Positions 40,309 to 59,459 are shown, counted from the stretch's first letter. The stretch is 64,000 nt of DNA from IMGVR_UViG_3300024259_002152:186001-250000; one strand, 5' to 3'. Program-made: numbers and translations. The notes: generated by a model from the sequence alone, not told the origin.

Positions 40309-41616
40309 ATGATTTTCGAAGTTAATAGAGAAGAATTCACAAGGGCTATTAAACCCGCTGTAGAGATTGCAACCAAAAACACACTCAAGGATTTCAAATA
40401 TGAGAATTTATTAACGATAAAAGCTGAACAGGATCAGGTTGTTTTGGTTTCTTATGGAGGCACATTAAGTATTGTCGCTCCTATATCAGGAAATAATTTT
40501 GGAGCACTAGATTATAGTTGCGAAGAAGAAGGGCAAACTACTGTTTATGCTGATGACTTATTGACATTTATGCAATCTCTTCCTAAAAGCTACGACAAAG
40601 TAAAGATTTCATTAGTGTCTAATCAGCTTAAATTATCTTCCGCTTCAAAGAAAACTGACGGCAAGAAGGCTAGTTCAGAACGATCTATGCCTACGGTGAC
40701 TGATATTGTTCGTCTTCCAAAAATTGGGACAACTTTTGACCAAGATATTGAATTGGATAGAGAGGTTTTTGTAAATGGTATTGATAGCGTCCTGTTTGCT
40801 CCAGCATACGAAGAAAAATATTTTTCTTATATGTGTATGTTATTTGAAGCAAGTTCTGGCACAGATCAAGAGATGAGATTTTCAGCAGGTTCAGGAGGAA
40901 GGTTTGCGATTAAATCTGTTAAAGGCAAGAATATAGTGCTGAATCAGAATGAAGCGAAGATGATTTTTCCAAAGAACAGTCTTTCTTCTATATTTAAGAT
41001 TTTATCAAGCGCAACAGAATCTTCCATTCGTATTAAATCTATAGGCGTAGATCAAACAAAAAATATTTCTGAGCAAATTCTGGTTGAGTGTGATGGAATG
41101 ACTATATGTGTATTTGGATTAGAGCATTTTACTAAATATCCTGATTTAAGTAAAATTTTAGCACATCAATATTCTAATAGAGTTTATAGTAGTTTGGAAG
41201 ATTGGCAGTCTATTGAGAAGACAATTGAGGGAACACGACACAGATGGAATGATAGTATTCATAATACGGAGATCATCATTGAAGAGAGTGATGAAGTTTT
41301 TAAAGTAACTCCTAAAACTCCTCATGCGAGTCCTACATTTATTGGAATGGTAGATACAAATGATTGTATTATCAAGGGTGATAAGATATGGTTCTGTTGT
41401 AATTCTGATTACCTGAGAGAGATGGTTGTTCAAGGTGGGGGTAAGGGTCGTATTCAGTTGAATTTTGAAAGTCAGTCGATATTGGAAGGGATAACAGATG
41501 ACAAACAGGCTCAGAAAATGATGAAACCAGTCCTGGTCAAATTTCCAGAAAATGTTGATGACGCCAAAAATACTGTTGATAACTTTTATATGTTCTTCTC
41601 AATTTCTACTAAATAA
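40309..41616 (+). CDS. dnaN: Divergent DNA polymerase III beta sliding clamp
   Basis: MIFEVNREEF N-terminus, KYPDLSKI and CNSDYL motifs at DnaN-like positions, size and context next to dnaX. Confidence 0.65.
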   Translation: MIFEVNREEFTRAIKPAVEIATKNTLKDFKYENLLTIKAEQDQVVLVSYGGTLSIVAPISGNNFGALDYSCEEEGQTTVYADDLLTFMQSLPKSYDKVKISLVSNQLKLSSASKKTDGKKASSERSMPTVTDIVRLPKIGTTFDQDIELDREVFVNGIDSVLFAPAYEEKYFSYMCMLFEASSGTDQEMRFSAGSGGRFAIKSVKGKNIVLNQNEAKMIFPKNSLSSIFKILSSATESSIRIKSIGVDQTKNISEQILVECDGMTICVFGLEHFTKYPDLSKILAHQYSNRVYSSLEDWQSIEKTIEGTRHRWNDSIHNTEIIIEESDEVFKVTPKTPHASPTFIGMVDTNDCIIKGDKIWFCCNSDYLREMVVQGGGKGRIQLNFESQSILEGITDDKQAQKMMKPVLVKFPENVDDAKNTVDNFYMFFSISTK

Positions 41617-46034: not shown

Positions 46035-48548
46035 GTGAATAAAGATTTTATCTTATCGGTTTTGAAGAAAGTGAGATTTTTGTTTCCTTTCGTGGTGGAC
46101 TCACCTCATGAGGTTCTTGGGGAGTTGGCGCAAATAATTCCATCTCGATATATGATATTTCCTTGTGATATTATAGATCTTAGACAGTTTATTAGAGAGG
46201 ATAAGATTTCATCTTCGAATCCTATACTGTTTTTTTCTCAAAAATTTGCAGATAAATATTTGAAAGAATATTCAGTGTTTTTAGTTCTTGACTCTCATGT
46301 AGATGTTGTGAATGATCTATACGGAGGTGTTCAAGTTAATTATTGCGATGAACTCCCTTTGTCTCATCTACTTGTTAGAATCCTTATTAACGAACCATCT
46401 GCAAATAACTCTTTCGATGTTGTTAAAAACTTAATGGAAGAATTTAATTTAGGGGTAGAATGTTTGGTATCAAATAGTGTTCCTGGTATTTCTGGTCCTA
46501 GCAAAAAATTGTCATATATAATAGAACCTAAAAAGGCACAAAGAACTATAGGTGTTCCTTCAGACCTCCCTCTTACTCCAAAAGAAAACGATATATTTGA
46601 GTTCTTGAGACAAGTTAAAAAAGATTACAATCTTGATATTCAAATGAGGGTGGCAGGAGGATGGGTCAGAGATAAGATTCTTGGTAAAGAAAGTGATGAT
46701 ATAGATATAGCTGTAGATATGCCAGGTTATGATTTTGCTAAATTGGTGGCCCAAGCTGCCTTTAAGAGCAATATATCTCATGACCCTAAAGCGTATAATG
46801 TTAGTTTAGACAAAGATGCAGACCCAGCCACGAGAGTTGATGATGACAATCTGATGGTAGGGGCTGTAGATTTATTTGGTCAGAAAATAGAATTTGTTCC
46901 AATGAGAACAGAGCACTATCCTGATCCTCAAAGCAGAAAACCTAAAATTACCACAACGAATGATCCAAGAGAAGATGTGAAAAGAAGAGATCTTACAATC
47001 AATTCTATTTATTATAATATAGATACTGGTCAAGTAGATGATTTTGTAGGAGGAGTAGAGGATTTAGGTTTGGAAAGCGGAAAAATGATATTAAGAACAC
47101 CAGATGATGCCAAAAAAACTTATGAAGAAGATCCATTAAGGTTGCTGAGAGCTTTGCGCTTTCATAGTCGTTATCCCAATAGCGAATTAGATCCAGATAT
47201 AATCAAATCAATGTCAGACCCAGACATACAAGAATCTTATGTCAAGAAAGTTGCTGCGTCAAGAGCTGGACCTGAGATAATGAAAATGTTAGTGGGGGAT
47301 AATCCTACTGCATCTTTAAAACTATTATTTGAGAGCGGTTTATATAGGAAAGTTTTTGATGTTCCTGCAATGGGGAATATTAATCCTGATGGTATAGAGA
47401 TGGATCAAAAATCTCCTTATCACAAATATAGTTTATTAGATCATACGATAGAAGTGGTGTCTAATCTTAATAGTATTATGAAAGAGAATGAAGAGCCCGA
47501 TGATATGAGAGGACTTATGAATCTTGCTGCTGTTTTTCATGATTTCGGAAAAATGGATAACAAAGTTGCAAGACCTCATAAACGTCCAAGAGTTCCTGGA
47601 CATACTACTTATGTTGGGCACGAAAGAAGCTCAGAAGATATGGCAGAAGCCATATTGAAATCTATTAACGTGCCAAAAGAAAAAAGAAATTTAGTTAATA
47701 CTGTTATTAAAACACATATGTATCCTCATGATGCTTCGGATTGGAGTAGTAAAAATAAAGGTCCAGGTAATTTTATTGAAAAATTAAAAATAAAAGGCAA
47801 AGGTGGAGTAGATGATTTGTGGAAGTATGTGTTTTATCATGGTCAAGCTGATGCCATGTCGTCTAATCCTGAGACATATGATGAGCAAAAATATAATCAA
47901 GGAAAAGAGTGGTTTGAGCAATATCGTTCTGAACCATCGACAGAATTTACCAGATTTCAAGGAACGTTAATAGATGGTAACGTAGTGGATAATCTCAGGC
48001 AGCAAATAGAGCAGCAGAGACAAGTTCGTATCAGAAAAAACATTATCAGTGATGCTTTACATTTTATTTTACAACAGCAATATACAGGTAATATTGATAT
48101 GTCTTTTGCTTCATTGCCAGAAGGAGCAGATAGAGAGAAAGCTATGAATAAGTCTATTAATGATGCTACTAATAAAGTCAAAGGGTGGATGCTTAATGTG
48201 CATAATAAATATTTAGAACCACCTAAGGGAGGACAGGTTATGGGGTCTAATTGGTTTAAAAAAGTAAAAACTGCACAAGTAGCTGCTCTATCAGGAGATG
48301 TGCAAACTCAAGATCCAGAGATAAAGAAAGGTCCAAAAGAAGCTCTTCCAAAATATCAAGTTGGTATGAAGGTAAGAGATAGAAGAAATTCTGTATCTCA
48401 ACAACAGACCTATGGGGTGGTAGAAGCAATAAAAGGTAATAAAATGAAGATAGTTTGGAATCCTGATAGTAAAGAAAAAAGACAAGAAGAAGTTGTCGAT
48501 ATGGTGGAAAATACTGAAATTTTATCTTTAATTGTTGCGGAGGTATAA
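46035..48548 (+). CDS. cca: Class II CCA tRNA nucleotidyltransferase with HD domain and N- and C-terminal extensions
   Basis: RVAGGWVRD...DDIDIA, EFVPMRTE, DVKRRDLTINS, EDPLRLLRALRF, LLDHT, FHDFGK, YVGHE. Confidence 0.9.
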   Translation: MNKDFILSVLKKVRFLFPFVVDSPHEVLGELAQIIPSRYMIFPCDIIDLRQFIREDKISSSNPILFFSQKFADKYLKEYSVFLVLDSHVDVVNDLYGGVQVNYCDELPLSHLLVRILINEPSANNSFDVVKNLMEEFNLGVECLVSNSVPGISGPSKKLSYIIEPKKAQRTIGVPSDLPLTPKENDIFEFLRQVKKDYNLDIQMRVAGGWVRDKILGKESDDIDIAVDMPGYDFAKLVAQAAFKSNISHDPKAYNVSLDKDADPATRVDDDNLMVGAVDLFGQKIEFVPMRTEHYPDPQSRKPKITTTNDPREDVKRRDLTINSIYYNIDTGQVDDFVGGVEDLGLESGKMILRTPDDAKKTYEEDPLRLLRALRFHSRYPNSELDPDIIKSMSDPDIQESYVKKVAASRAGPEIMKMLVGDNPTASLKLLFESGLYRKVFDVPAMGNINPDGIEMDQKSPYHKYSLLDHTIEVVSNLNSIMKENEEPDDMRGLMNLAAVFHDFGKMDNKVARPHKRPRVPGHTTYVGHERSSEDMAEAILKSINVPKEKRNLVNTVIKTHMYPHDASDWSSKNKGPGNFIEKLKIKGKGGVDDLWKYVFYHGQADAMSSNPETYDEQKYNQGKEWFEQYRSEPSTEFTRFQGTLIDGNVVDNLRQQIEQQRQVRIRKNIISDALHFILQQQYTGNIDMSFASLPEGADREKAMNKSINDATNKVKGWMLNVHNKYLEPPKGGQVMGSNWFKKVKTAQVAALSGDVQTQDPEIKKGPKEALPKYQVGMKVRDRRNSVSQQQTYGVVEAIKGNKMKIVWNPDSKEKRQEEVVDMVENTEILSLIVAEV

Positions 48549-48549
48549 A

Positions 48550-49440
48550 ATGTTACAGGTTGGTTATGGAGGTTATTATTTGGTAGGGGGCAACGTAACA
48601 GAATATGTCGATTCTCCGACATATTATGAGCCTGGTTTTAATGTTATGTACCCAATAGAAATAGCCGCTCCTAAGTCAGATCGTTTTTTCATTCTTATCA
48701 GGAAAAGAGAAGATGAGTCGGGAGATGGTTTTGCCAATTTGGTTGCTACAAATGTTTCAGCGACAGCAGTTGACGCCACTAATGGAGAAAGTCTATTAGT
48801 AAGGACTTCTAATAACACTTTACATCCCGCTTGGAATCAAGATCCATCTTCTACTACTCCTGTTCTCCTACAGATAGATAATCAGTTGGACATGGTTAAT
48901 ACTATTTTAAGAGTAAGAGTAATTGATTGTAAAGTGAAAGATTCGACAGATAATAGTTTTATCAATTTTAGAGTGATTATAGAAGAAGATCCTGAAGATT
49001 TATATTTCAATTATATTCCTGTGCATAGGAGAATATATCCCGATAGAAATACTTTTAGTATTGCTGGTAGGTCAGCATATGTAACATTAAGAAATGATAG
49101 CGATGCTTATTTATTAGTGTCCCCCTATGCTTGGTTAAAGGAAGACACAAAGGATAAGTCAGATTTTTCTTATCCTCAAGATACATTTTATTATCAAATA
49201 GAGAATACTTACAATAGCGAAGACTTTACATTTGCATTATCAAGTTATAGTGATTCTTTTGTGGCTGAACATGTGTCTGTGTTAAATGTCCCAGGGAACA
49301 AAAAAGTAGCTCTTATTTTAATAGATAATGCTATTTATGATTATATATTTCAGTTGAGAAGTGGCGTAAGTTTAGTAATATCTGTTGTGGGAGAACTTAG
49401 TGGTATAGAAGATACGTTTACGGTCAACCTTAATGTATAG
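48550..49440 (+). CDS. Beta-rich hypothetical protein (possibly structural)
   Basis: GGAGG SD before ATG 48550; aromatic, Asn/Thr-rich composition. Confidence 0.55.
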   Translation: MLQVGYGGYYLVGGNVTEYVDSPTYYEPGFNVMYPIEIAAPKSDRFFILIRKREDESGDGFANLVATNVSATAVDATNGESLLVRTSNNTLHPAWNQDPSSTTPVLLQIDNQLDMVNTILRVRVIDCKVKDSTDNSFINFRVIIEEDPEDLYFNYIPVHRRIYPDRNTFSIAGRSAYVTLRNDSDAYLLVSPYAWLKEDTKDKSDFSYPQDTFYYQIENTYNSEDFTFALSSYSDSFVAEHVSVLNVPGNKKVALILIDNAIYDYIFQLRSGVSLVISVVGELSGIEDTFTVNLNV

Positions 49441-49449
49441 GAGCGGGTA

Positions 49450-49962
49450 ATGGGATGGTTTAAAGAGTCACAAAATGAAAATTTTATAGAAAAAGTAAAG
49501 GATATTTTAAAAAAACATTCTTTCACTAACGCAATATCTAACTACTATCATATTCCCATTAGTGAAGTCGATACTCATCTAGAAATAGAGGTGTGTGATC
49601 TTCATGGGAAATTTGCAGAAGGAAATGGTAAATTAATAAGAATAGATAAAAAGTTGTTAGATAATGACTTCTTTGATGAAAATTTTCACTTTGTGATCCA
49701 CGAATTTTTCCATTGGTTGAAGAGAAGGTCAGAAAATAAATTTTACTTCAACGATCCAGAAGAAGTCCAAAGTTTTGTTTTGCAGATGGCTTGGAATTTG
49801 ATAAATGGGAAAAGCGAAGAAGAAGTAACTAGAAAGATTTATCCCATCATTAAGGCTCATTTTAAAGATCAAAATAAATTTGAAGATGTATTTACAGAAA
49901 TGTTAAATAAAGCAATTAATCTCTATCAGATTTATCAGAGAGGGGGAGAATTTTCGATTTAA
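49450..49962 (+). CDS. Putative zincin metallopeptidase with N-terminal MGWFKESQ motif
   Basis: VIHEFFHW (HExxH) with downstream DPEEVQSF. Confidence 0.65.
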   Translation: MGWFKESQNENFIEKVKDILKKHSFTNAISNYYHIPISEVDTHLEIEVCDLHGKFAEGNGKLIRIDKKLLDNDFFDENFHFVIHEFFHWLKRRSENKFYFNDPEEVQSFVLQMAWNLINGKSEEEVTRKIYPIIKAHFKDQNKFEDVFTEMLNKAINLYQIYQRGGEFSI

Positions 49963-49992: not shown

Positions 49993-50709
49993 ATGAAAAG
50001 AATAAAAGTAACGCATTTTTTGCAAGATCCTGCACTTTGTGCAGTAGCCGCAGTCGCTGTTGTAGCAAATTTTTATAATCCAGAGATAACTTATGAGCAT
50101 GTGAAGAAAGTGGCTCATAGAAAAATTAGTAAAAAAATATCCGATGATGGACTATATTCTTCTCAAATATGTATGCTCCTTAATCTTCTAGGATTTCAGA
50201 ATGTATCTTTAGTTACTAGTGATTTTTCATGTATAGATTATTCCTGGTGTGATTATGGAAAAAGAAAGATGAAAGAAGTCCTAGAACAATCAATTTATAC
50301 TAAAAAAGAGAAAGAAGAGAGAGCTTTAACCAAAAATCTTTATAAATGGTATACGTTACAAGGTTATAACAATAGTATTAAAATTGATTATAATTTTGGC
50401 AGGTATATTAGAAAGCAATTAAATAAAAGAAAGCCTCTCATTTTGTCTTTTAATTGGACTATGTTTTTTAAGTTTGCTAAAGAGGGAGAAGTCGGACCAG
50501 ATCCAATAAATGGGGAGTCTGAGGAGCATGCTGTAGTTGCGAATGGTTATGATAAAAATGGAGTATGGGTAGTGGACTCTCATCATAATTACTACACCTA
50601 TAATAGGAAAAAGTATAGAAGAGGTTTTTACAAGATATCTTGGGAAAATTTATTCACTATTATGGGTGAGGGAGATGTGATTATTCCTAATGATTATTAT
50701 ATTGAATAA
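49993..50709 (+). CDS. C39-like (papain-fold) cysteine peptidase
   Basis: HFLQDPALCAVAA (Gln/Cys), KPLIL, EHAVVANGYD...VVDS (His/Asp). Confidence 0.78.
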   Translation: MKRIKVTHFLQDPALCAVAAVAVVANFYNPEITYEHVKKVAHRKISKKISDDGLYSSQICMLLNLLGFQNVSLVTSDFSCIDYSWCDYGKRKMKEVLEQSIYTKKEKEERALTKNLYKWYTLQGYNNSIKIDYNFGRYIRKQLNKRKPLILSFNWTMFFKFAKEGEVGPDPINGESEEHAVVANGYDKNGVWVVDSHHNYYTYNRKKYRRGFYKISWENLFTIMGEGDVIIPNDYYIE

Positions 50710-50721
50710 GAGAAAATATTT

Positions 50722-52296
50722 ATGGCTTTTGACAGATATGTAGAGGGGTTTGATCAGTGCGAGCCTCCTGTATGTCCTGAAGATATAGTTATAACTATTA
50801 TCAGTGTTAGTTGCACAGAAGACAAGATGCTGCATGTAGAATGGTTGGTTACCGATAAATATAATAGAGATATTAATGGTAACTATTTAGCATGGTCTTG
50901 TGATAATCAGGATTTAGATACTACTGTTTTTCCTTCCATAGGTCCTACTTCTTATGTCTCTTATTTTGATATCTCTAGCTGTATGGGGATTATTTATTTT
51001 AAAATAAAGGTAAGAATTGGAACTACTTTTTTTGAGGGGGATTTAGAAGCGTTCGATACAGCACTATGTACGTCAAGCGATACAGCAGTTCCAGCATCAT
51101 GGTGCGGGGATTGTCCTGATGGAGTTTCTACACCTCCTCCATATCTACTGTATGTGATATCATCTACTGTTCCTTCATATCCTACATATTTTGACTATGC
51201 AGGGTTATGCTGGTATGTAGATGATAATGAGAATGAAATTTCTATAAGGGATTTGCCAGAAGGAGCTATTTTAACTGGAGCAAGTGAAATATATTCATCT
51301 TGTGAAGACTGTTGCTTACAATTAGATTGTCCTAGTCCTTGGGTAGAATTGCCAGCAGATATTCAAGCATTTGCGGGAGAAAAGGTGGGAGTCTTTTATT
51401 TTGAATATCAGACTTATGATGTTGCAGATCAGTTATTCGTTATTAGGAACTTTTTTGAGCCAGATGATTGTCTCACTGATGATGATGGAAATCTTTTACC
51501 TCCCCCTGATAATAAGATACTATTTGATACGGGTTGTGTGAGTACTAATTTACAGGATTGTCCATCTTTTTTCGTAGATGATCCCCTCTGTATGGATTTT
51601 GCTGCTGCTACTTATGGTTTTTGTGTTAGGGTTAGGGAGGGAGAGTTACCAATAGGTATTCTTAATGTTTGTAATTGTAATGATACCGAAGGCACTTATT
51701 GGAGAATATGTAGTATAGATCCTGATCGCAACATTTCTAATTGGGAAGGTGGAGATGAATGTTTATGCACGGATATGAGTTCTTCAAGCAGTTCTAGCTT
51801 AAGTAGTTCAAGTAGTTCAAGTTCAAGTTCAAGTTCAAGTAGTTCTAGTTCTAGTAGTTCTAGTTCTAGTTCTAGTAGCTCTAGTTCTAGTAGTTCTAGT
51901 TCTAGTTCTAGTTCTAGTTCTAGTTCTAGTAGTTCTAGTAGTTCTAGTAGTTCTAGTTCTAGCAGTTCTAGTTCTAGTAGTTCTAGTAGTTCTAGTAGTT
52001 CAAGTAGTTCAAGTAGTTCTAGTAGTTCTAGTAGTTCAAGTTCAAGTAGTTCTAGCAGTTCGAGTTTAAGTAGTTCGAGTAGCTCTCAAAACTTATGGTA
52101 TCATGCGGCTACAGGATGGACGGGGTCAGGATGCACAGGTATACCTGCTGGTTTGGTGCTCATCTGTCTTCCATCAGGTGTTGCGAATGGAAGATGTTAT
52201 AATGGAAGCTTCTCGGGTCTTCCGAGCGGATGCACAACCCTCGGACCAACAACTCCGTGCTCTGCAATAGATGGGACATATACTGGACCTTGTTAG
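50722..52296 (+). CDS. Cys-rich protein with poly-Ser tract and unique C-terminal tip (paralogue A1)
   Basis: MAFDRYVEGFDQCEPPVCP N-terminus; ~350-aa conserved Cys-rich region; Ser tract; ~70-aa Cys/Gly/Thr tip. Confidence 0.8.
   Translation: MAFDRYVEGFDQCEPPVCPEDIVITIISVSCTEDKMLHVEWLVTDKYNRDINGNYLAWSCDNQDLDTTVFPSIGPTSYVSYFDISSCMGIIYFKIKVRIGTTFFEGDLEAFDTALCTSSDTAVPASWCGDCPDGVSTPPPYLLYVISSTVPSYPTYFDYAGLCWYVDDNENEISIRDLPEGAILTGASEIYSSCEDCCLQLDCPSPWVELPADIQAFAGEKVGVFYFEYQTYDVADQLFVIRNFFEPDDCLTDDDGNLLPPPDNKILFDTGCVSTNLQDCPSFFVDDPLCMDFAAATYGFCVRVREGELPIGILNVCNCNDTEGTYWRICSIDPDRNISNWEGGDECLCTDMSSSSSSSLSSSSSSSSSSSSSSSSSSSSSSSSSSSSSSSSSSSSSSSSSSSSSSSSSSSSSSSSSSSSSSSSSSSSSSSSSSSSSSSSSSSSSSSSLSSSSSSQNLWYHAATGWTGSGCTGIPAGLVLICLPSGVANGRCYNGSFSGLPSGCTTLGPTTPCSAIDGTYTGPC
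51778..52086 (+). repeat. Poly-Ser coding tract (103 codons: 101 Ser, 2 Leu by hand count)
   Basis: Mosaic of AGT TCT, AGT AGT TCT, AGT TCA and AGT TCG units. Confidence 0.95.
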
Positions 52297-52327
52297 GTGT
52301 AAAAATATTAAATAAGAGAAAAATAAT

Positions 52328-54010
52328 ATGTTAGATTGTCAAGTAATAACAGAAAACGATGATATCTTTATTTGTAAAAAGATGGGAGAAAGAACCCATT
52401 TTAAAGATTTTAAAATACACAAATCTCAATGTGAGCAGTGCGTGAAAGATGAAGAAATAGTGCTAAGACAGTTTGAAAATAATTTTTATTTTAGCTGTTT
52501 GATAAGTGTCGATCAAATAGATAAATTAGAGAATAAAGAAGAGATTATAGAAAATACTTTAGAATATTTTAGGCATTCTGAAAATGATCCAGATTTAGTA
52601 AATAAATTAAAATCTATGTTATTCTATTTTGTTATGAATCCTAGATTTAAATTTGATCCTATGGACAAATTGAGGTTGGAATATATTTTAAATAATATTG
52701 AAAATTTGAATTTATCGGAATCAATGGAAAGTTTTATTAACGATGATGAAAATTTATATAATTTTTATAAAAAGAACTTATTGGATTTAATGAGTAGTAA
52801 TATAGATGTTTTTAAAAATAGTATTAAACAACAATTAGAAATGGTGGTCGTTACAAAAGATTTTGCTATTCGATTTTTTGGGGAAAATAAAGACAAATTT
52901 GATGATGCTTTTTGTGCCGATTTTCATAAGTCTTTAAAAGAGTATGATAATAATATGGGGAGGATGAAGAAAGATCCTAATTTCGTTCCTGTTTTTAAAG
53001 TATCTTTAATAGATAAAATAAAGGGGGCAAAAGAAGCATTTAAAAGAATAGTAAAGAAATCTAAAGAAGAAGGAAAAGATGCTTTATGGATCAGCGAGAA
53101 AAAAATAATAGAAAGGCAAGTTTGTTGTACTACCTGCACGGATGGAGGAAGTTGTCCTTATTGTGGTTGCCAGATAAAGAAATCATGGTTTTTACCGCTA
53201 GGAAAATCAGAATTGTCAACTGAGGGCTGTCCCAATCTCAATACTTATCCCCATCTTAAAATCTTTCCCTCAAAAAATTATTGGGAAGTGTGTGAAGAAA
53301 AAACTTCTGTGATTATAGTCGCAAGAAATGAAGAAAATTTGAATAAAACTCTTGGAAGTCTTATTGCTAATGCAACAGGAGAAATAGAAATATTAGTTGG
53401 ATTAGATGGGTGCAGATATGATGTTATAAATAATGAAAAAGTTGCTACTTTACAATTTAATCAACATATAGGTAGGAGAAAAATATCTAATCAATTAGTT
53501 AAGTTGGCTACTGGGAAATACTTATTTGAAGTTGATGCTCATTGTGCTGTTTCTTATGGGTGGGATACTAGGTTAAAATGTGTGTGTGATGATAATATTA
53601 TTGTCGGATGTTCTGTTAATTCTATCGATGAAAAATTATGGGGATGTGATGAGGATATTAAATGGGTGGGAGGGAAAATAATAGAAGATGCAAAATGGAA
53701 ATGGGATAAAATTGATAATAATGTTGAGAAGATAGAAGAGGTAGAGAGTTTTAATGCTTGCGGATGGATGATAAGAAAAGATTATTTTGAAAAATTAGAT
53801 GGTCATGATGAAGATCTTGGAGAATGGGGATGGGAGAATGTTGAGTGGACATTAAAGAATAAATCTAATAGTGGTAGAATTATTATAAGAACAGATGTTA
53901 TAGTATCACATCTGTTTCGGAAACAGTATCCCTATGAAATAAAAGGATTAAAGTATAATGATGTAATACAAATATTAAAAAATAAAGACATTTACAAACA
54001 GGGTGTCTAA
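52328..54010 (+). CDS. Glycosyltransferase with polypeptide-GalNAc-transferase-like GT-A domain and Cys-cluster N-terminal region
   Basis: TSVIIVARNE, DAHC (DxH), WGWENVE, SHLFRK; upstream CCTTC...CPYCGC...GCP cluster. Confidence 0.78.
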   Translation: MLDCQVITENDDIFICKKMGERTHFKDFKIHKSQCEQCVKDEEIVLRQFENNFYFSCLISVDQIDKLENKEEIIENTLEYFRHSENDPDLVNKLKSMLFYFVMNPRFKFDPMDKLRLEYILNNIENLNLSESMESFINDDENLYNFYKKNLLDLMSSNIDVFKNSIKQQLEMVVVTKDFAIRFFGENKDKFDDAFCADFHKSLKEYDNNMGRMKKDPNFVPVFKVSLIDKIKGAKEAFKRIVKKSKEEGKDALWISEKKIIERQVCCTTCTDGGSCPYCGCQIKKSWFLPLGKSELSTEGCPNLNTYPHLKIFPSKNYWEVCEEKTSVIIVARNEENLNKTLGSLIANATGEIEILVGLDGCRYDVINNEKVATLQFNQHIGRRKISNQLVKLATGKYLFEVDAHCAVSYGWDTRLKCVCDDNIIVGCSVNSIDEKLWGCDEDIKWVGGKIIEDAKWKWDKIDNNVEKIEEVESFNACGWMIRKDYFEKLDGHDEDLGEWGWENVEWTLKNKSNSGRIIIRTDVIVSHLFRKQYPYEIKGLKYNDVIQILKNKDIYKQGV

Positions 54011-55839
54011 TGGCTTTTGACAGATATGTAGAGGGGTTTGATCAGTGCGAGCCTCCTGTATGTCCAACGGATATAACGATTGAGATTATTAATGTTGTGT
54101 GTGTATCTAATACTTTATATGTTACATGGAGTATTGTAGATAATACCAGCCAGAATTTACTAGATAATCTTAATTCCAATGATCTGCTATGGTCTTGTGA
54201 TAATCAAGATTTTGATAATATTGTTTCTCCTGGATACTCTTCTACCAATATTTATACTGTTTCTTTTGATGTTTCCACTTGTGATGGAGTCATTTATTTA
54301 AAAGTAAAAGCAAAAATAGTTACTACTTTTTTTGAAAGTGGTATAGAAACATTTGATACATCGGGATGTATTGATGTTAGTAATCTAGCAGTTCCTGCAA
54401 TTTGGTGTGGAGATTGTCCTGATATAGTTTCTACTCCTCCTCCATATTTATTATATGTGAGATCTTCTACTGTCCCTTCGTACCCTACATATTTTGATTA
54501 CGGAGGTTTATGCTGGTATGTAAATAGCAGTAATAATGAGATTATGATAGAAGATTTACCAGTAGGGGCCATTTTGACTGGAGCAAGTGAAATATATTCA
54601 TCTTGTGAAGACTGTTGCTTACAATTAGATTGTCCTAGTCCTTGGGTAGAATTACCATCAGACATTCAAGCATTTAATGGAGAAAAGGTAGGAGTCTTTT
54701 ATTTTGAATATAAAACTTATCTCGTTGCTGATAGAATATATGTAGTTAGAAATTTTGATCCAGATGATTGTGATGCAGAAGGACCTTGGACTCCTCCGTC
54801 TGAAAAAATATTATTTGATACAGGTTGTGTAAGTACTAGTGCAGGTCCTTGTCCATCTTTTTTTGTAAGTGATCATTTGTGTTTAAGTTATGGTTCTTCT
54901 ACTTATGGTTTTTGCGTTCGGGTTAGGGAGAGCGAGTTACCTATAGGTCTTGTTAATGATTGTAACTGTAATGATGAGACTACAGATACTAATTGGGAAA
55001 TATGTAGTGTAGATCCTGATGGTGTTATCTCTAATTGGGAAGGTGGGAACGATTGTTTGTGTGAAGATGCCATGTCTTCCAGTAGTTCAAGTTCAAGTAT
55101 AAGCTCAAGCAGTTCAAGCAGTTCAAGTAGTTCAAGCAGTTCAAGTAGTTCAAGTTTGAGTAGCTCGAGTAGTTCTAGCTCGAGTAGTTCTAGTTCAAGC
55201 AGTTCTAGTTCAAGTAGTTCTAGTTCAAGCAGTTCTAGTTCAAGTAGCTCTAGTTCAAGTAGCTCTAGTTCTAGTAGCTCTAGTTCAAGTAGTTCTAGTT
55301 CAAGTAGTTCGAGTTCGAGTAGTTCGAGTTCGAGTAGTTCGAGTTCGAGTAGTTCGAGTTCGAGTAGTTTTAGTAGTTCGAGTTCAAGTAGTTCGAGTTC
55401 AAGTAGTTCGAGTTCAAGTAGTTCGAGTAGCTTAAGTTCGAGTAGTTCGAGTTCAAGTAGTTCGAGTAGCTCAAGTTCGAGTAGCTCAAGTCACGCTGCT
55501 GAGGGTTGTCCCGCTACGTGTGGAGATTGTAGCGAAACTTATAATGTAGAAATAACAGGTTTTACTACTAGTCCTGAGCATAATATTTCTACCACCGTTA
55601 CACGAATTAGTGGATGTCAATGGATAACTGCTGGGATGGGTTTCGGAATGGCAGGAGCAGCTATTGAATGTGCTGGAGGAGTATGGGTAGTGCGTGAATA
55701 TTATTTATTCCCATATGTAATGGCTATAATTCCATCTGGTACAGAACCTCTCGCTTATACTAATGATTGCCCTACTACTAATTCTCCATATAACTTACTA
55801 AGTGCCATAGGAGATACTGGGATAGCAACGGTATCTTAA
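54010..55839 (+). CDS. Cys-rich protein with poly-Ser tract and unique C-terminal tip (paralogue A2)
   Basis: First 56 nt identical to A1; same Cys framework; different ~115-aa tip. Confidence 0.8.
   Translation: MAFDRYVEGFDQCEPPVCPTDITIEIINVVCVSNTLYVTWSIVDNTSQNLLDNLNSNDLLWSCDNQDFDNIVSPGYSSTNIYTVSFDVSTCDGVIYLKVKAKIVTTFFESGIETFDTSGCIDVSNLAVPAIWCGDCPDIVSTPPPYLLYVRSSTVPSYPTYFDYGGLCWYVNSSNNEIMIEDLPVGAILTGASEIYSSCEDCCLQLDCPSPWVELPSDIQAFNGEKVGVFYFEYKTYLVADRIYVVRNFDPDDCDAEGPWTPPSEKILFDTGCVSTSAGPCPSFFVSDHLCLSYGSSTYGFCVRVRESELPIGLVNDCNCNDETTDTNWEICSVDPDGVISNWEGGNDCLCEDAMSSSSSSSSISSSSSSSSSSSSSSSSSSLSSSSSSSSSSSSSSSSSSSSSSSSSSSSSSSSSSSSSSSSSSSSSSSSSSSSSSSSSSSSSSSSSSSSSSFSSSSSSSSSSSSSSSSSSSSLSSSSSSSSSSSSSSSSSSSHAAEGCPATCGDCSETYNVEITGFTTSPEHNISTTVTRISGCQWITAGMGFGMAGAAIECAGGVWVVREYYLFPYVMAIIPSGTEPLAYTNDCPTTNSPYNLLSAIGDTGIATVS
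55075..55491 (+). repeat. Poly-Ser coding tract (139 codons, 135 Ser by hand count)
   Basis: AGT/AGC-TCN mosaic with I, L, F, L interruptions. Confidence 0.95.
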
Positions 55840-55880
55840 AAGATAAAAAGGAAAAATTGTACAAAATGAGGAACAAAAAT

Positions 55881-55920
55881 ATGTTAGACTGTTAAATAAA
55901 AACAGAAAATGGTAATATTT
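55881..55920 (+). pseudogene. 5' remnant of a second copy of the glycosyltransferase gene
   Basis: ATGTTAGACTGTTAAATAAAAACAGAAAATGGTAATATTT vs 52328 ATGTTAGATTGTCAAGTAATAACAGAAAACGATGATATCT: 32/40 identical, MLDC*IKTENGNI vs MLDCQVITENDDI. Confidence 0.65.
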
Positions 55921-55946
55921 GAGAAATAAAAAAGGAACAAAATATT

Positions 55947-56996
55947 ATGACTTTTAATAGATATACAGAAGGATTTGATCAATGCGGACCGCCATCATGT
56001 CCTGAGGATGTGATAGTAGAAATTACAAATAAGACATGCACTAATGATAACACATTGCATATAGAATGGACTGTCGTAGACAGGTATAACAGAAATCTAG
56101 ATCTAAATTCTGTTTTATGGTCTTGTGATAATCAGAATTTTAATAATACTTCTTACCCAGAAAATGATTTTCAGCCATATGAAACTTCTTTTGATGTTTC
56201 TAGTTGTGAAGGTATTATTTATTTAAAAGCAAAGGTAAGAATTGGTACAACTCTTATAGAAAGTAAGGTAGAAACATGCGATACGGCTTTGTGTGATACA
56301 ATTAGTAATCTAGCAGTTCCTGCAATTTGGTGTGGAGATTGTCCTGATACTGTTTCTAATCCTCCTTTATACTTATTGTATGTGAGATCTATGACTGTCC
56401 CTTCATATCCTGCATATTTTGATTACGGAGGGTTTTGCTGGCATTTAACTAATGATAATAACGAGGTATCTACGGATGATTTACCAGAAGGGGCTATTTT
56501 AACTGATATAGATACCTCTTATCTATATTGCAATGATTGTTGTTTAAAATTAGATTGTCCCAGTTCGTGGGTGGAGTTGTCGGCTGATGCCCAAGAAACC
56601 CCAGGAGAAAGGGTGGGAGTTTTTTACTTTGAATATCAAACGACTATTTGTCCTGATAGATTTTATGTTATTAAGAATTTTGTGGATAGTGATTGCACTG
56701 CTGCGGGGGCATGGACTCCAGAGTCAGATAAAATATTATTTGATACGGGTTGTATCGCAACTAGTTTAGAAGAGGGTCCATCATTTTTTGCTGGTAATCA
56801 TTTATGTTTAGATTATGGAGAGCCCACATATGGTTTTTGTTTAACTGTTAGAGAGGGAGATTTACCTATAGGTATTGTTAATGATTGCGATTGTTCAGAT
56901 AATTGCAATACTACTTGGAAAATATGTAGTGTAGATCCTGATGGTAGCATTCTTAATTGGGAAGGTAGTAATGAATGTCTATGTGAGGAAATTTAG
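55947..56996 (+). CDS. Cys-rich paralogue A3 lacking the Ser tract and tip
   Basis: MTFNRYTEGFDQCGPPSCP; 25 Cys by hand count; ends CLCEEI* exactly where A1/A2 enter poly-Ser. Confidence 0.8.
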   Translation: MTFNRYTEGFDQCGPPSCPEDVIVEITNKTCTNDNTLHIEWTVVDRYNRNLDLNSVLWSCDNQNFNNTSYPENDFQPYETSFDVSSCEGIIYLKAKVRIGTTLIESKVETCDTALCDTISNLAVPAIWCGDCPDTVSNPPLYLLYVRSMTVPSYPAYFDYGGFCWHLTNDNNEVSTDDLPEGAILTDIDTSYLYCNDCCLKLDCPSSWVELSADAQETPGERVGVFYFEYQTTICPDRFYVIKNFVDSDCTAAGAWTPESDKILFDTGCIATSLEEGPSFFAGNHLCLDYGEPTYGFCLTVREGDLPIGIVNDCDCSDNCNTTWKICSVDPDGSILNWEGSNECLCEEI

Positions 56997-57019: not shown

Positions 57020-57385
57020 ATGGAGTATCAAACAATGACGTTTAAAAATATATGTAAAAATTATTTTGATAGGAATAAAAAATATCTGCTATCAGATCAC
57101 ATTATTTACGAGATGAATGGGGCTGTGTTATGTAAGACAAGCAATGCTATTTTTGATTTTCATGAAATAGCAATAAAAAATATTATAGATTATTGCAAAG
57201 AGGCAGGATATGAAAAAATAGATAAAGTAGTTTTTGTTTCTTCTTATGATGTAGATATTGTTGAAGATGCTCCCAAATTACAACTAAAAATGCAAGCTGA
57301 TTCTAAAATAAGTATAATAAAAGAAAATGACAGATTTATAGCAATGGTTTGTATTGGAGAATGGGTGGAGATTAATGAAAAATAA
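57020..57385 (+). CDS. Hypothetical protein
   Basis: 121-aa ORF. Confidence 0.55.
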   Translation: MEYQTMTFKNICKNYFDRNKKYLLSDHIIYEMNGAVLCKTSNAIFDFHEIAIKNIIDYCKEAGYEKIDKVVFVSSYDVDIVEDAPKLQLKMQADSKISIIKENDRFIAMVCIGEWVEINEK

Positions 57386-59459
57386 TATAAAACAGAGTAT
57401 ATTCTTAGTGGGTTTTTTAATCATTTTTATTTCTTTTGTGCTGTCATGGAGGGTATTGACTTATAAAAAACTAGAAAATACTATTGTATTGAATACTCAA
57501 GAGAGGCTAGTGACTGTCGTTGAATCGGAATCAGTAATTATCAGTCAATTGATAAATAATTATTTTGTAGAGGACGATTGGTTGGCATTTATGAATGATT
57601 TCAATGGGAGAACGGGAAAAATAGGAAAAGATGGATATATGTGGATAATAGATGATAAGGGAATAGTAAAATATCATCCATATCAACAATACATCGGTAA
57701 AAGTGCAATTATTTTAAGAAGGAATATATTGGATGATGGAGGTTGTAAGAATTTTGAAGATATTATTGGTAGAATGAAAAGAGGAGAAAAAGGATATGGA
57801 GATTATACATCTATTTGGAGCAATAAAGATCAAAAAAAAGTGAAAAAAATAGTAGCATTTTGCCCTCTTGAAGTAAATAAAAACAAATGGTCGATTGCTG
57901 TTTCTATTGGTTATGTGGAGATCTCGTCTCCTATAGTCATAAATAAATATATGGATATTTTCGGCGTAATTGTTATATTTATTTTTACTTGTATTGTGGG
58001 TTATATTTTTTATAAGAAACAAAAGAAAATAGATGAAACAAGTATATTTGTTCAAACAGAACACGAGTTAAGGGAAAGTAAAGATTTTATAAGAAGAGTT
58101 ATTGATACTATTCCTCTTTTAGTTTTTGTAAAAGATTATGAGGGACATTACATATTAGCTAATCAAACATTGGCAGACATGCTAGGCGTAACAGTAGAAA
58201 AAATAGAGGGGAAAAAAGACATCGATTTCATGGGTAGCACTGAGGTTGAGGAAGCAAATCGGTATACAGATGCAGATAAAAAAGTCATTACAACTCAGGA
58301 AGAGATGCATATTTATGAAGAAAAATCTACGGACTCTAAGGGCAATATCGTATATTTTAACACAATAAAATATCCTTTAACTATTGGGGAGAAATCTGAT
58401 TACGTTCTAGGAGTATCTACTAATATCACAGAAAGAAAAATGGCAGAAGAGAAAATAGAGTCTTTGGCAAAATTTCCAGGAGAAAATAGCAATCCAGTGT
58501 TGAGAATAGATCATGATGGCAAACTTATTTATGCTAATAATGCTAGTGAAGCTTTATTAGAACTATGGGGTAGTAACGTGGGAGGATATGTGCCATCATC
58601 TTTTACTCATATAATAAAAGAGTGTTTGTTAGAGCATATAGTAAAAACTAAAGATATAAAAATTAATGGTAATATTTTGACATTGAGTTTCACTCCTATC
58701 CGTGATGATTATATTAATATTTATGGATCAGATATCACAGACATAAAAGCAGCAGAAGAAGAATTGAGAAAAGCAAACGAGGGGTTAGAGGAATTTGCTT
58801 ATATTACTTCTCATGATTTACAAGAACCATTAAGAACTGTTTTTGCATATTCTCAGTTATTGAAAAATTCTTGTTACGATAGATTGAGTGAAGAAGAACA
58901 AAAATTTCTTAACTATTTAATGAGCGGCAGCCAACGGATGAAGATACTTGTAAAAGAGTTGCTTGATTACTCAAGAGTTGGGAAAAGTCGAGATGCATCA
59001 GGAATTGAAAGAGTGAATATAGGGATGTTATTGGATGAGATCTTTGAAGACTCTCAAGTATATATTAAAGAAACAAATGCTATTATTACTGTTCAAAAAC
59101 ATATGCCTACAATTATTGGTTCTCGTTTGAGAATAAAACAGTTATTTCATAATCTAATTAGTAATGCATTGAAATTTAGAGGACAACAACAACCTATCAT
59201 AAAAATAGGTTATCGCGAGTTAGATGATGCAAATTATTGGGAGTTTTATGTTGAAGATAATGGGATAGGAATTGATCCTCAATTTCATGATCGTATTTTT
59301 GGTATTTTTAAAAGGTTGTATTCTAGAGAAGAATATCCTGGAACAGGTATAGGATTAGCTTTGTGTAAAAAGATTGTAGAAACTCATGCAGGTGATATAT
59401 GGGTAGAGTCTGAAGCGAATAAAGGGACTATAATCTATTTTACAATTGCTAAATCATAA
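57375..59459 (+). CDS. Membrane sensor histidine kinase (TM-Cache-TM-PAS-PAS-HisKA-HATPase)
   Basis: Two hydrophobic segments; GYMWIIDDKGIVKYHP; EEFAYITSHDLQEPLR; NLISNALKF; DNGIGID; GTGIGLALCKKIV. Confidence 0.92.
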   Translation: MKNNIKQSIFLVGFLIIFISFVLSWRVLTYKKLENTIVLNTQERLVTVVESESVIISQLINNYFVEDDWLAFMNDFNGRTGKIGKDGYMWIIDDKGIVKYHPYQQYIGKSAIILRRNILDDGGCKNFEDIIGRMKRGEKGYGDYTSIWSNKDQKKVKKIVAFCPLEVNKNKWSIAVSIGYVEISSPIVINKYMDIFGVIVIFIFTCIVGYIFYKKQKKIDETSIFVQTEHELRESKDFIRRVIDTIPLLVFVKDYEGHYILANQTLADMLGVTVEKIEGKKDIDFMGSTEVEEANRYTDADKKVITTQEEMHIYEEKSTDSKGNIVYFNTIKYPLTIGEKSDYVLGVSTNITERKMAEEKIESLAKFPGENSNPVLRIDHDGKLIYANNASEALLELWGSNVGGYVPSSFTHIIKECLLEHIVKTKDIKINGNILTLSFTPIRDDYINIYGSDITDIKAAEEELRKANEGLEEFAYITSHDLQEPLRTVFAYSQLLKNSCYDRLSEEEQKFLNYLMSGSQRMKILVKELLDYSRVGKSRDASGIERVNIGMLLDEIFEDSQVYIKETNAIITVQKHMPTIIGSRLRIKQLFHNLISNALKFRGQQQPIIKIGYRELDDANYWEFYVEDNGIGIDPQFHDRIFGIFKRLYSREEYPGTGIGLALCKKIVETHAGDIWVESEANKGTIIYFTIAKS

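What the first reader, a model, noticed from the sequence alone, without database searches (positions are those of the whole stretch)
50722..56996. Modular paralogue family: constant Cys-rich base, optional Ser stalk, swappable tip
Seen: A1, A2 and A3 share a ~350-aa framework (25 Cys in A3) ending WEG..(E/D)CLC. A1 and A2 continue into poly-Ser and unrelated Cys-containing tips (~70 and ~115 aa); A3 stops three residues later. No signal peptides are visible. Inference: a heterotrimer or alternative fibres with different reach and receptor specificity, with A3 as a stalk-less cap or adaptor. So many Cys in a cytoplasmically made protein implies metal binding or post-lysis disulfide formation.
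Basis: partly seen in the sequence, partly recalled or inferred. Interest (0 to 1): 0.6.

Follow-up and report, generated by a model that had tools for sequence, protein, structure and literature searches.

The report
Huge-phage modular Cys-rich, Ser-stalked tip proteins
A marine huge phage carries three tandem copies of an undescribed cysteine-rich protein whose constant base is followed by an optional poly-serine stalk and an exchangeable end domain, next to an enzyme resembling the one that starts mucin-type sugar attachment, so they are probably sugar-coated adhesive fibrils.

Summary
A1 (50722-52296), A2 (54010-55839) and A3 (55947-56996) share a ~350-aa base with 23, 23 and 25 Cys. A1 and A2 continue into 103- and 139-aa poly-Ser tracts and unrelated 69- and 115-aa tips. 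A3 stops three residues after CLC.

The window lies in a 351-kb seawater phage contig. The family matches no Pfam, PHROG or NCBIfam model and no cultured phage. A profile search finds 90 metagenomic clusters.

- **Base.** It has three modules: an FN3-like D1, a Cys-rich D2 and a beta-sandwich D3. D2 also occurs as tandem repeats in a siphophage protein three genes after the tape measure.
- **Locus.** Relatives sit in one hypervariable cassette inside a conserved frame. Each cassette holds 1-3 members.
- **Tips and stalks.** There are at least 25 unrelated tip types, including lectin-like and propeller domains. Ser stalks span 14-162 aa.
- **Other cargo.** It is mostly glycan enzymes (also radical SAM-type genes and a papain-like peptidase). 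The window's GT2 matches, among solved structures, almost only polypeptide GalNAc-transferases.
- **Cysteines.** They appear and vanish in pairs, which points to disulfides.

Best reading: extracellular, probably virion-borne, O-glycosylated fibrils with swappable binding tips. Virion location, glycosylation and the proposed heterotrimer are untested.

The parts
50722..51777 (+). A1 base (residues 1-352): conserved N-terminal peptide and motif, FN3-like D1, Cys-rich D2, beta-sandwich D3; 23 Cys
51778..52086 (+). A1 poly-Ser stalk, 103 aa with 101 Ser, encoded by alternating AGT/AGC and TCN codons in imperfect 6-15-nt repeats
52087..52296 (+). A1 tip, 69 aa with 6 Cys, and its stop codon. It is a small Cys-rich module with no relative in any other family member.
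52328..54010 (+). Glycosyltransferase, 560 aa. The GT-A catalytic part (about residues 318-540) is like polypeptide GalNAc-transferases (GT27), with the DxH and Gal/GalNAc-T motifs aligned. The N-terminal ~320 aa are unique and contain a CC..C....C..C.C cluster. Its stop overlaps the A2 start codon.
54010..55074 (+). A2 base (residues 1-355), 23 Cys
55075..55491 (+). A2 poly-Ser stalk, 139 aa with 135 Ser
55492..55839 (+). A2 tip, 115 aa with 6 Cys, and its stop codon. It is marginally similar to the tip of the distant member P0027 (pairwise E 0.001).
55947..56300 (+). A3 D1 (residues 1-118): a disordered but conserved N-terminal peptide, the [FY]-D-x-C-x-P-P-x-C motif, and an FN3-like domain
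56301..56555 (+). A3 D2 (residues 119-203): a Cys-rich ~60-80-aa module. The same module occurs as 4-5 tandem repeats in other phage proteins such as P0082.
56556..56996 (+). A3 D3 (residues 204-349) and stop codon: a beta-sandwich that ends WEG..ECLC. There is no stalk and no tip.
49993..50709 (+). Peptidase_C39_2-like cysteine peptidase. It lies directly upstream of the cassette in most relatives but is absent in the distant subgroup seen in L035.
49450..49962 (+). Conserved 170-aa frame gene with an HEFFH (HExxH) motif. It has no family match.
48532..49440 (+). Conserved 302-aa beta-rich frame gene of unknown function
57020..57385 (+). Conserved 121-aa gene that closes the cassette on the 3' side in all relatives seen whole

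Best explanation
A1, A2 and A3 belong to an undescribed, lineage-specific family of modular extracellular proteins of marine huge phages.

**Domain roles (inferred).** The N-terminal base is a conserved disordered peptide followed by FN3-like D1, D2 and D3. I take it to be the constant structural and anchoring part, stabilised by disulfides that form once the protein leaves the reducing cytoplasm. The poly-Ser tract is a flexible spacer. The likeliest enzyme to O-glycosylate it is the polypeptide-GalNAc-transferase-like enzyme encoded between A1 and A2, which would make an extended mucin-like stalk. The C-terminal tip is an exchangeable binding module. The three paralogues would then give one phage three variants with different reach and specificity: two tipped variants and one bare base.

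**Location (inferred).** Most likely they are fibrils or decorations on the virion.

**Shown.**
- The paralogy and the domain architecture.
- The diversity of tips and stalks among relatives.
- The hypervariable cassette in a conserved frame.
- The GT27-like motifs of the glycosyltransferase.
- Glycan enzymes as recurrent cassette cargo.
- Gain and loss of Cys in pairs.

**Inferred.**
- Virion location.
- Actual glycosylation of the Ser tract.
- Disulfide formation.
- A binding function for the tips.
For: **Family and architecture.**
- A profile search found 90 cluster representatives. The base is always at the extreme N-terminus.
- The base is built from three separable modules.
- Tips include Laminin_G_3, LVIVD propellers, DUF6242/Kelch-like repeats, BNR-like repeats (recognised by eye, no Pfam hit), small Cys-rich modules and a recurrent 65-80-aa helical domain.

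**Locus.**
- At least 12 distinct contigs keep the same order: CCA enzyme, p302, p170, C39_2, cassette, p121, His kinase. They include IMG/VR contigs of 298 kb and 548 kb.
- The cassette runs from 1.6 to 8.6 kb and holds 1-3 members.

**Glycosylation.**
- Of 17 PDB matches at E<=1, the 15 best are polypeptide GalNAc-transferases (best E 1.5e-9). The DxH motif and the WG.EN.E...V.H.FR motif align.
- Other cassettes carry Gly_transf_sug, Glyco_tranf_2_4, a polysaccharide pyruvyl transferase, a sulfotransferase and radical SAM genes.
- A GT27-like gene also sits directly before the Ser-stalked member P0027 in L037.
- The window's first 25 kb is a nucleotide-sugar biosynthesis island.

**Extracellular character.**
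- Cys columns co-vary in pairs: C327-C344, C129-C195 and C31-C116 without discordance, then C235-C320 and C60-C87.
- By established knowledge, poly-Ser linkers, FN3 domains and lectin-like tips are typical of extracellular proteins.

**Virion link.**
- D2-like repeats make up a 614-aa protein that lies three genes after the tape measure in an unrelated 34-kb siphophage contig.
- D1 is FN3-like (Z about 10). By established knowledge, Ig-like and FN3 domains in phages occur mainly in structural proteins.
Against: - The cassette does not lie among recognisable structural genes. Its neighbours are a CCA-adding enzyme, a clamp loader, a His kinase and a vWA protein.
- No sheath, terminase or baseplate Pfam family was detected in the 73%-complete record.
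- No homologue exists in any cultured phage, so there is no proteomic support.
- Glycan enzymes do not track the Ser stalks. Three complete cassettes with Ser stalks have none (L010, L013, L032). L005 has the GT27-like gene but no Ser-stalked member in the part seen.
- The sugar genes could serve DNA or host-surface modification instead.
- The Cys pairing signal comes from 24 related sequences and is partly phylogenetic.
- The oligomer test gave no verdict.
Confidence: 0.45

Rival explanations
1. The proteins are made in the infected cell and released at lysis as free, non-virion proteins. Examples would be soluble lectin-like binders, decoys, or matrix and particle adhesins. The modular logic is the same, but nothing is attached to the particle.
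For: - The locus lies outside any recognisable structural module.
- There is no signal peptide and no anchor motif.
- The commonest tip is a small acidic helical domain rather than a lectin.
Against: - The N-terminal peptide and motif are conserved in every member, which suggests docking to a conserved partner.
- The D2 module is reused in a protein at the tail-fibre position of a siphophage.
- Tip hypervariability in otherwise syntenic genomes is the usual signature of receptor-binding proteins.
Confidence: 0.2
2. A1, A2 and A3 co-assemble through their bases into one hetero-oligomeric fibre, such as a heterotrimer, with A3 as a stalk-less cap or adaptor.
For: - Tipless or truncated members never occur alone in a fully seen cassette.
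- D2 and the D2/D3 junction are kept nearly identical between A1 and A2, at up to 97% nucleotide identity. That fits a shared interface, or gene conversion.
Against: - Complete cassettes with a single member exist (L010, L032), so hetero-assembly is not required.
- The number of members varies from 1 to 3.
- The fold is FN3 plus beta-sandwich beads followed by a disordered Ser tract, not a trimeric shaft.
- The complex prediction gave no verdict and counts neither way.
Confidence: 0.12
3. The proteins work inside the cell as metal-binding (Zn or Fe-S) scaffolds that act on host processes. The Cys would be metal ligands, not disulfides.
For: - CxxC and CxC spacings are frequent in the base.
- The proteins are made in the cytoplasm without a signal peptide.
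- Neighbouring genes are non-structural.
Against: - Cys are gained and lost two at a time, not in sets of three or four.
- The FN3 domain, poly-Ser linkers, and lectin and propeller tips are extracellular hallmarks.
- A protein O-glycosyltransferase-like gene is embedded in the cassette.
Confidence: 0.08
4. The family members are substrates of a RiPP-like or glycocin-like maturation pathway. The C39 peptidase would remove the short N-terminal peptide, and the GT2 and radical SAM enzymes would modify Cys or Ser residues.
For: - A C39-like peptidase lies immediately upstream in most loci. GT2 and radical SAM genes occur in cassettes.
- A few members have Gly-Gly just before the first Cys motif.
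Against: - The proteins are 350-1030 aa, not peptides.
- The segment before the motif is only 9-15 aa, and Gly-Gly is not general.
- No ABC transporter is fused or adjacent.
- The C39 gene is absent in the L035 subgroup.
- Radical SAM genes sit beside members with helical, Cys-free tips.
Confidence: 0.05

Closest known systems
Modular phage receptor-binding proteins and tail fibres (conserved N-terminal anchor, exchangeable C-terminal tip)
   Same: - The N-terminus is constant and the C-terminus is hypervariable.
- There are several paralogues per genome, and tips are shuffled between otherwise syntenic genomes.
- The tips are lectin-like or propeller domains.
- The D2 module is reused in a gene at the tail-fibre position.
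   Different: - The locus is not in a recognisable structural module.
- The base is FN3 plus two unmatched beta domains rich in Cys, not a trimeric shaft.
- Stalks are poly-Ser of 100-140 aa.
- There is no sequence or fold match to any known fibre.
Mucin-type O-glycoproteins with polypeptide GalNAc-transferases (GT27), eukaryotic
   Same: - The embedded glycosyltransferase aligns best to GalNAc-T catalytic domains (15 of 17 PDB matches at E<=1), including the DxH and Gal/GalNAc-T motifs.
- Its neighbours carry long Ser-only tracts that would make ideal acceptors.
   Different: - The enzyme has no ricin-type lectin domain and no membrane anchor.
- It has a unique 320-aa N-terminal part.
- The acceptor tract is almost pure Ser, without Thr or Pro.
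- The system is in a bacteriophage.
- The donor sugar and the acceptor are unknown.
Virion glycosylation in mycobacteriophages (Freeman et al. 2023, as cited in PMC12619734)
   Same: Phage-encoded glycosyltransferases act on C-terminal extensions of phage structural proteins. I know this only from the citing text.
   Different: - There the substrates are capsid and tail-tube subunits.
- Here the candidates are a separate modular family with 100-140-aa poly-Ser tracts and a GT27-like enzyme.
- Nothing has been shown experimentally here.
Serine-rich repeat glycoproteins (SRRPs) of Gram-positive bacteria
   Same: A Ser-rich stalk carries a binding region, and dedicated glycosyltransferases are encoded alongside.
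   Different: - There is no signal peptide, no LPxTG and no SecA2/Y2 genes.
- The binding module is C-terminal to the stalk.
- The tract is homopolymeric Ser rather than SxSx dipeptide repeats.
Polyserine linkers of secreted carbohydrate-active enzymes in marine Gammaproteobacteria (Saccharophagus, Cellvibrio; from my own knowledge)
   Same: Long poly-Ser spacers encoded by mixed codons join independently folding extracellular modules, and small Cys-containing binding modules often sit at the end.
   Different: There is no signal peptide, no catalytic glycoside hydrolase domain, and the context is a phage.
Ig-like/FN3 decoration proteins such as T4 Hoc, and the FN3 string of the T5 central fibre pb4
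   Same: - D1 is FN3-like (Z about 10).
- T5 pb4 is the top Foldseek row for the whole model, at E 1.6e-4 but TM only 0.23.
   Different: The resemblance is limited to the common FN3 fold. There is no sequence relation, and D2-D3 are unmatched.

Membership tests
Phage tail fibre / receptor-binding protein | Conserved N-terminal attachment region with a variable C-terminal binding region | tested here: met
   The base is at the N-terminus in all members. There are at least 25 unrelated tip clusters.
Phage tail fibre / receptor-binding protein | Encoded within or next to the tail or baseplate gene module | tested here: not met
   The neighbours are a CCA enzyme, two putative peptidases, a His kinase and a vWA protein. 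No sheath, baseplate or terminase Pfam hits occur in the 351-kb record, which is 73% complete. Structural genes of huge phages are often scattered and divergent, so this is weak negative evidence.
Phage tail fibre / receptor-binding protein | Presence in purified virions | not testable with these tools
   No cultured relative exists.
Phage tail fibre / receptor-binding protein | Homo- or hetero-trimeric assembly | tested here: inconclusive
   Complex prediction on the three D2-D3 parts returned no verdict.
Polypeptide GalNAc-transferase (GT27), for the gene at 52328-54010 | GT-A catalytic domain with the DxH metal motif and the Gal/GalNAc-T motif | tested here: met
   The 15 best of 17 PDB matches are GalNAc-Ts, and both motifs align. 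Pfam places it only in Glycos_transf_2, at 26.2 bits against a cut-off of 23.3.
Polypeptide GalNAc-transferase (GT27), for the gene at 52328-54010 | C-terminal ricin-type lectin domain and a type II membrane anchor | tested here: not met
   The protein ends about 20 residues after the catalytic match. There is no lectin Pfam hit and no hydrophobic segment.
Polypeptide GalNAc-transferase (GT27), for the gene at 52328-54010 | Transfers GalNAc from UDP-GalNAc to protein Ser/Thr | not testable with these tools
   This needs an enzyme assay.
Serine-rich repeat glycoproteins (SRRP) | Long N-terminal signal peptide, LPxTG anchor and an accessory Sec system | tested here: not met
   No hydrophobic N-terminus and no LPxTG were found. 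No SecA2/Y2 genes lie in the neighbourhood.
Double-glycine leader substrates of C39 peptidases (bacteriocins, glycocins) | A 15-30-aa leader ending in Gly-Gly, and a C39 domain fused to an ABC exporter | tested here: not met
   The segment before the motif is 9-15 aa, and Gly-Gly occurs only in a few members. The peptidase is a stand-alone 238-aa Peptidase_C39_2 and is absent in L035.
Fibronectin type III domain (D1 only) | Seven-stranded beta-sandwich superposable on FN3 domains | tested here: met
   VIA-align gives Z 9-10.5 at rmsd 2.5-3.0 over 90-100 residues with many FN3 domains. There is no Pfam fn3 sequence hit.

The most novel reading that the evidence does not exclude
A lineage of marine huge phages builds its own mucin-like glycoproteins. 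A GT27-like polypeptide O-glycosyltransferase would turn 100-140-residue poly-Ser tracts of a phage-specific, disulfide-rich protein family into glycan bottle-brush stalks. In relatives, further glycosyltransferases, a sulfotransferase and a pyruvyl transferase would add to this, fed by a phage-encoded sugar-nucleotide island. The stalks would hold exchangeable lectin-like tips away from the particle. If so, this would be, to my knowledge, the first mucin-type protein O-glycosylation system described in a bacteriophage, and a new type of virion appendage.
Probability: 0.3. Interest if true: 0.8.

Novelty: new variant of a known kind. Interest (0 to 1): 0.62.

Why it matters
- **Host range and particle adhesion.** Huge phages are known almost only from metagenomes, and how they recognise hosts is unknown. 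This locus is a clearly delimited hypervariable cassette in a conserved frame. Its exchangeable tips make it the best candidate in this lineage for the determinant of host range or of adhesion to particles.
- **Phage protein glycosylation.** A polypeptide-GalNAc-transferase-like enzyme sits between long poly-Ser proteins, glycan-modifying enzymes recur in relatives' cassettes, and a 25-kb sugar-nucleotide island lies nearby. Together they make phage-directed protein O-glycosylation directly testable with two genes.
- **New domains.** The family adds three uncatalogued domains (D2, D3 and the helical tip) to the list of phage protein modules.

Tried and rejected
- **Family scans.** Pfam, PHROGs and NCBIfam gave no family for A1, A2, A3, p302, p170 or p121.
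- **Cultured phages.** tblastn of the base, of p302 and of the glycosyltransferase against 50,697 phage records found nothing.
- **Cellular genomes.** With alignment A1 it found no relative. The patterns were narrow, so this is weak evidence of absence from cellular genomes.
- **Fold searches on D2-D3 (model pLDDT 90).** PDB Foldseek and BFVD gave no row with E <= 0.001. The best VIA-align hit was Z 6.8, a calcium-dependent carbohydrate-binding module aligned on D3. That is within the range the tool calls common arrangement.
- **ESM Atlas.** The searches by structure and by features gave only weak rows.
- **Complex prediction.** The three D2-D3 parts together returned no verdict, with score 0.00 and the partner poorly folded. 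This is not evidence either way.
- **Structural genes.** Pfam sheath, terminase and baseplate families were not found in the phage record.
- **Promoters and terminators.** Counts were at chance level.
- **Helical tip.** A profile of this domain matched nothing in PDB or Pfam.
- **Reads.**
  - Only Logan contigs were available, and they break at the Ser tracts.
  - One-codon insertions inside the tracts appear in contigs of four runs, but they cannot be told apart from misassembly or from other Ser-tract genes.
  - A joint that would remove A3 (55859 to 56929) appears in two runs, but its shorter side is only 20 letters.
- **Ser stalks and glycan enzymes.** I looked for a statistical link between the two within cassettes. 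There is none at this sample size, because nearly every cassette has a Ser-stalked member anyway.
- **Literature.** Four searches found no description of this family. The 'moraphage' paper describes another lineage and was used only for its citation on virion glycosylation.
  - No alternative genetic code was used.
  - The large profile search was run only after the word search and family scans left the protein open.

Full report
**1. Check of the observation**

ORF calling reproduces the three genes exactly: A1 at 50722-52296 (524 aa), A2 at 54010-55839 (609 aa) and A3 at 55947-56996 (349 aa).

- Their first ~350 residues align without large gaps. A1 is 68% identical to A2 and 57% to A3.
- Searching the whole phage record with A3 finds just these three copies, at E 7e-147 for A2 and 1.5e-138 for A1.
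- A3 has 25 Cys. The A1 and A2 bases have 23 each and their tips 6 each.
- All three bases end NWEG..(E/D)CLC, and A3 stops three residues later.
- The Ser tracts are 103 aa (101 Ser) and 139 aa (135 Ser). They are encoded by alternating AGT/AGC and TCN codons in imperfect 6-15-nt units.
- The 69-aa and 115-aa tips are unrelated to each other.
- There is no signal-peptide-like segment, no membrane-spanning segment and no LPxTG.
- A3 is the most Cys-rich ORF over 300 aa in the genome, at 7.2% against a median of 1.75%.

**2. Where it lies**

The window is bases 186001-250000 of a 350,866-bp IMG/VR virus record, estimated 73% complete. The record is contig Ga0233437_1000033.

- GC is about 32% and nearly all genes are on the + strand.
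- PHROG hits include a clamp loader, a sliding clamp and a tRNA nucleotidyltransferase, so this is a huge phage.
- Identical sequence occurs in contigs of several independent seawater metagenomes.

**3. The family**

No Pfam, PHROG or NCBIfam model matches the proteins. No cultured phage has a relative.

- The word search found six relatives, all from metagenome assemblies (sample records).
- The exhaustive profile search found 90 cluster representatives at E <= 1e-3.
- In all of them the base starts at the very N-terminus with the motif [FY]-D-x-C-x-P-P-[VI]-C.
- The 9-15 residues before that motif are conserved, but AlphaFold models them as disordered.

The base is three separable modules:

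| Module | A3 residues | What it is |
|---|---|---|
| D1 | 1-118 | FN3-like, VIA-align Z 9-10.5 |
| D2 | about 122-203 | Cys-rich module; also 4-5 tandem repeats in otherwise unrelated proteins |
| D3 | 204-349 | Beta-sandwich; duplicated in some members |

- D2 is absent from some members.
- Short members of about 200 aa, with D1-D2 only, recur.
- A model of D2-D3 built on 34 sequences is confident (pLDDT 90.3, pTM 0.70). It has no significant match in PDB or BFVD.
- The base is therefore neither a known enzyme nor an S-layer fold.

**4. Tips and stalks**

Among 121 non-identical members and fragments, 28 have Ser-rich stalks of 14-162 aa. The tips fall into at least 25 sequence-unrelated clusters. 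They include:

- Laminin_G_3, LVIVD propellers and DUF6242/Kelch-like repeats.
- BNR-like repeats, larger beta-rich Cys-containing domains and small 65-100-aa modules with 6-17 Cys. These were classified by eye.
- A 65-80-aa acidic helical domain. It is the commonest tip, in about 13 of the 15 members of its BLAST cluster, the other two being long repeat tips. It has no known relative.

The A2 tip is marginally similar to the tip of the distant member P0027. The A1 tip has no relative.

**5. A hypervariable cassette in a conserved frame**

At least 12 distinct phage contigs were fetched by protein identity or by pattern. They include IMG/VR contigs of 298 kb and 548 kb. All show the same gene order:

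CCA-adding enzyme, p302, p170 (HExxH motif), Peptidase_C39_2, [cassette], p121, PAS His kinase, (vWA), p289, p433.

- The cassette varies from 1.6 to 8.6 kb and holds 1-3 family members.
- Every cassette seen whole has at least one tipped member. Tipless or truncated members never stand alone. Seven of eight complete cassettes have a Ser-stalked member.
- A more distant subgroup (L035) keeps CCA, p302 and p170 but lacks the C39 gene. The peptidase is therefore not obligatory.
- Within the window, A1 and A2 are mosaics: 47-49% nucleotide identity in the FN3 part and up to 97% at the D2/D3 junction. This fits recombination between paralogues or strong local constraint.

**6. Glycan enzymes are the main recurrent non-family cargo**

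The gene between A1 and A2 (52328-54010) passes the Pfam Glycos_transf_2 cut-off only narrowly.

- Against all solved structures at E<=1 it gives 17 matches. The 15 best are polypeptide N-acetylgalactosaminyltransferases (best E 1.5e-9); the other two are marginal and unrelated.
- The DxH metal motif and the Gal/GalNAc-T motif (WG.EN.E...V.H.FR) align.
- It lacks the lectin domain and membrane anchor of the eukaryotic enzymes. It has a unique N-terminal 320 aa.
- Its stop codon overlaps the A2 start codon.
- Orthologues sit in the cassettes of L012, L005, L021 and L025, and directly before the Ser-stalked P0027 in L037.

Other cassettes carry different glycan enzymes:

- L020: two Gly_transf_sug genes and a radical SAM-like gene.
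- L027: a radical SAM gene, a polysaccharide pyruvyl transferase and Glyco_tranf_2_4.
- L018: a sulfotransferase.
- L007: DUF6625, radical SAM, Gly_transf_sug, Glyco_tranf_2_4 and Peptidase_C1.

Glycan enzymes do not track Ser stalks cassette by cassette. L010, L013 and L032 have stalks but no such enzyme in the cassette. The link is therefore functional logic, not statistics.

Separately, the first 25 kb of the window is a nucleotide-sugar biosynthesis island. The phage clearly invests in glycans.

**7. Cysteines**

In 24 full-length bases, Cys columns are gained and lost in pairs.

- C327-C344, C129-C195 and C31-C116 show no discordance.
- C235-C320 and C60-C87 are nearly as clean. C60-C87 lies inside the FN3 sandwich.

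This pattern is expected for disulfides rather than for three- or four-ligand metal sites. It is partly confounded by phylogeny.

**8. Link to virions**

P0082 consists of five D2-like repeats followed by a short Ser-rich stretch.

- It is encoded in a 34-kb siphophage-like contig.
- It is the third gene after the tape measure protein, downstream of head-tail adaptor and collagen-like fibre genes. That is the usual place of a tail-tip or fibre gene.

This positional evidence is the only direct pointer to a virion role. Apart from it there is only the general rule that FN3 and Ig-like domains of phages occur in structural proteins (established knowledge).

Against a virion role, the cassette's own neighbours are not structural. 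No structural Pfam family was detected in the record.

**9. Interpretation**

The best-supported reading is a family of extracellular, disulfide-stabilised modular proteins made of a constant base, a flexible and probably O-glycosylated Ser spacer, and an exchangeable binding tip.

- They are most likely displayed on the particle. The three paralogues would give three variants.
- I put this at about 0.45. The uncertainty is mainly about virion location and actual glycosylation.
- The complex prediction gave no verdict and is not used.

**10. Comparison and novelty**

In logic this resembles modular receptor-binding proteins. In chemistry it resembles mucin-type glycoproteins, SRRPs and poly-Ser-linked secreted enzymes.

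It fails the defining features of each of those families that I could test: structural-module location, signal peptide or LPxTG, lectin domain and membrane anchor, and a double-glycine leader.

Neither the family nor the association with a GT27-like enzyme is described in the literature I could search. I rate it a new variant of a known kind, with interest 0.62.

Noticed in passing
window 105-25360: A nucleotide-sugar biosynthesis island of about 25 kb. It holds:
- a UDP-GlcNAc 2-epimerase, two cytidylyltransferases, a GT1-like gene and a methyltransferase;
- a 2-hydroxyacid dehydrogenase and an NDP-sugar 4,6-dehydratase;
- two TPP-dependent E1 and transketolase-type gene pairs, and an aldo-keto reductase;
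- three further epimerase/dehydratase genes and a dTDP-4-dehydrorhamnose 3,5-epimerase;
- two radical SAM genes, one with a B12-binding domain;
- two UDP-glucose/GDP-mannose dehydrogenase-like genes;
- an MptE-like hit just under the Pfam cut-off. From memory, that family includes Maf flagellin glycosyltransferases.

The island suggests synthesis of unusual, perhaps nonulosonic or branched, sugars.
   Followed up: partly
window 57354-59459: A phage-encoded sensor histidine kinase with Cache, PAS, HisKA and HATPase domains. It is conserved just downstream of the cassette across the lineage. L010 also carries two response-regulator genes.
   Followed up: no
window 46035-48548: An 837-aa CCA-adding enzyme / poly(A) polymerase-type nucleotidyltransferase with an HD domain and long N- and C-terminal extensions. 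It is the conserved upstream frame gene.
   Followed up: no
L007 11587-11922 (also L008): A 111-aa ORF with a Cas12f1-like_TNB hit sits between two family members inside the cassette. It may be a remnant of a TnpB-type mobile element at the variable site.
   Followed up: no
L010 13306-15405: A 699-aa gene with Hint, intein-splicing and LAGLIDADG hits (all weak or faint), which suggests an intein-containing gene, in a related phage contig.
   Followed up: no
window 55859-56929: Contigs of two independent seawater runs (X3, X4) show a joint that would skip 1069 bases and remove nearly all of A3. The shorter side of the joint is only 20 letters, so this may be an artefact.
   Followed up: no
window 51778-52086 and 55075-55491: Public assemblies break at both Ser tracts. 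Their contigs carry one-codon insertions (AGT, TCG, TCA, TAG-phase) inside the tracts. This may be stalk-length polymorphism, but contigs cannot separate it from assembly error.
   Followed up: partly
window 29860-31860; 38297-39406; 40309-41616; 26622-27509: A topoisomerase I-like gene (phrog_13226; annotated topA in other phages), a clamp loader, a sliding-clamp-like processivity factor and an RlaP-family nucleotidyltransferase. Together they form a replication and RNA-repair block upstream of the cassette.
   Followed up: no
L034 216-1910 and 10001-11845: An unrelated 34-kb siphophage contig carries a collagen-repeat tail-fibre-like gene and the D2-repeat protein P0082. P0082 also ends its repeats with a short Ser-rich stretch.
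   Followed up: partly
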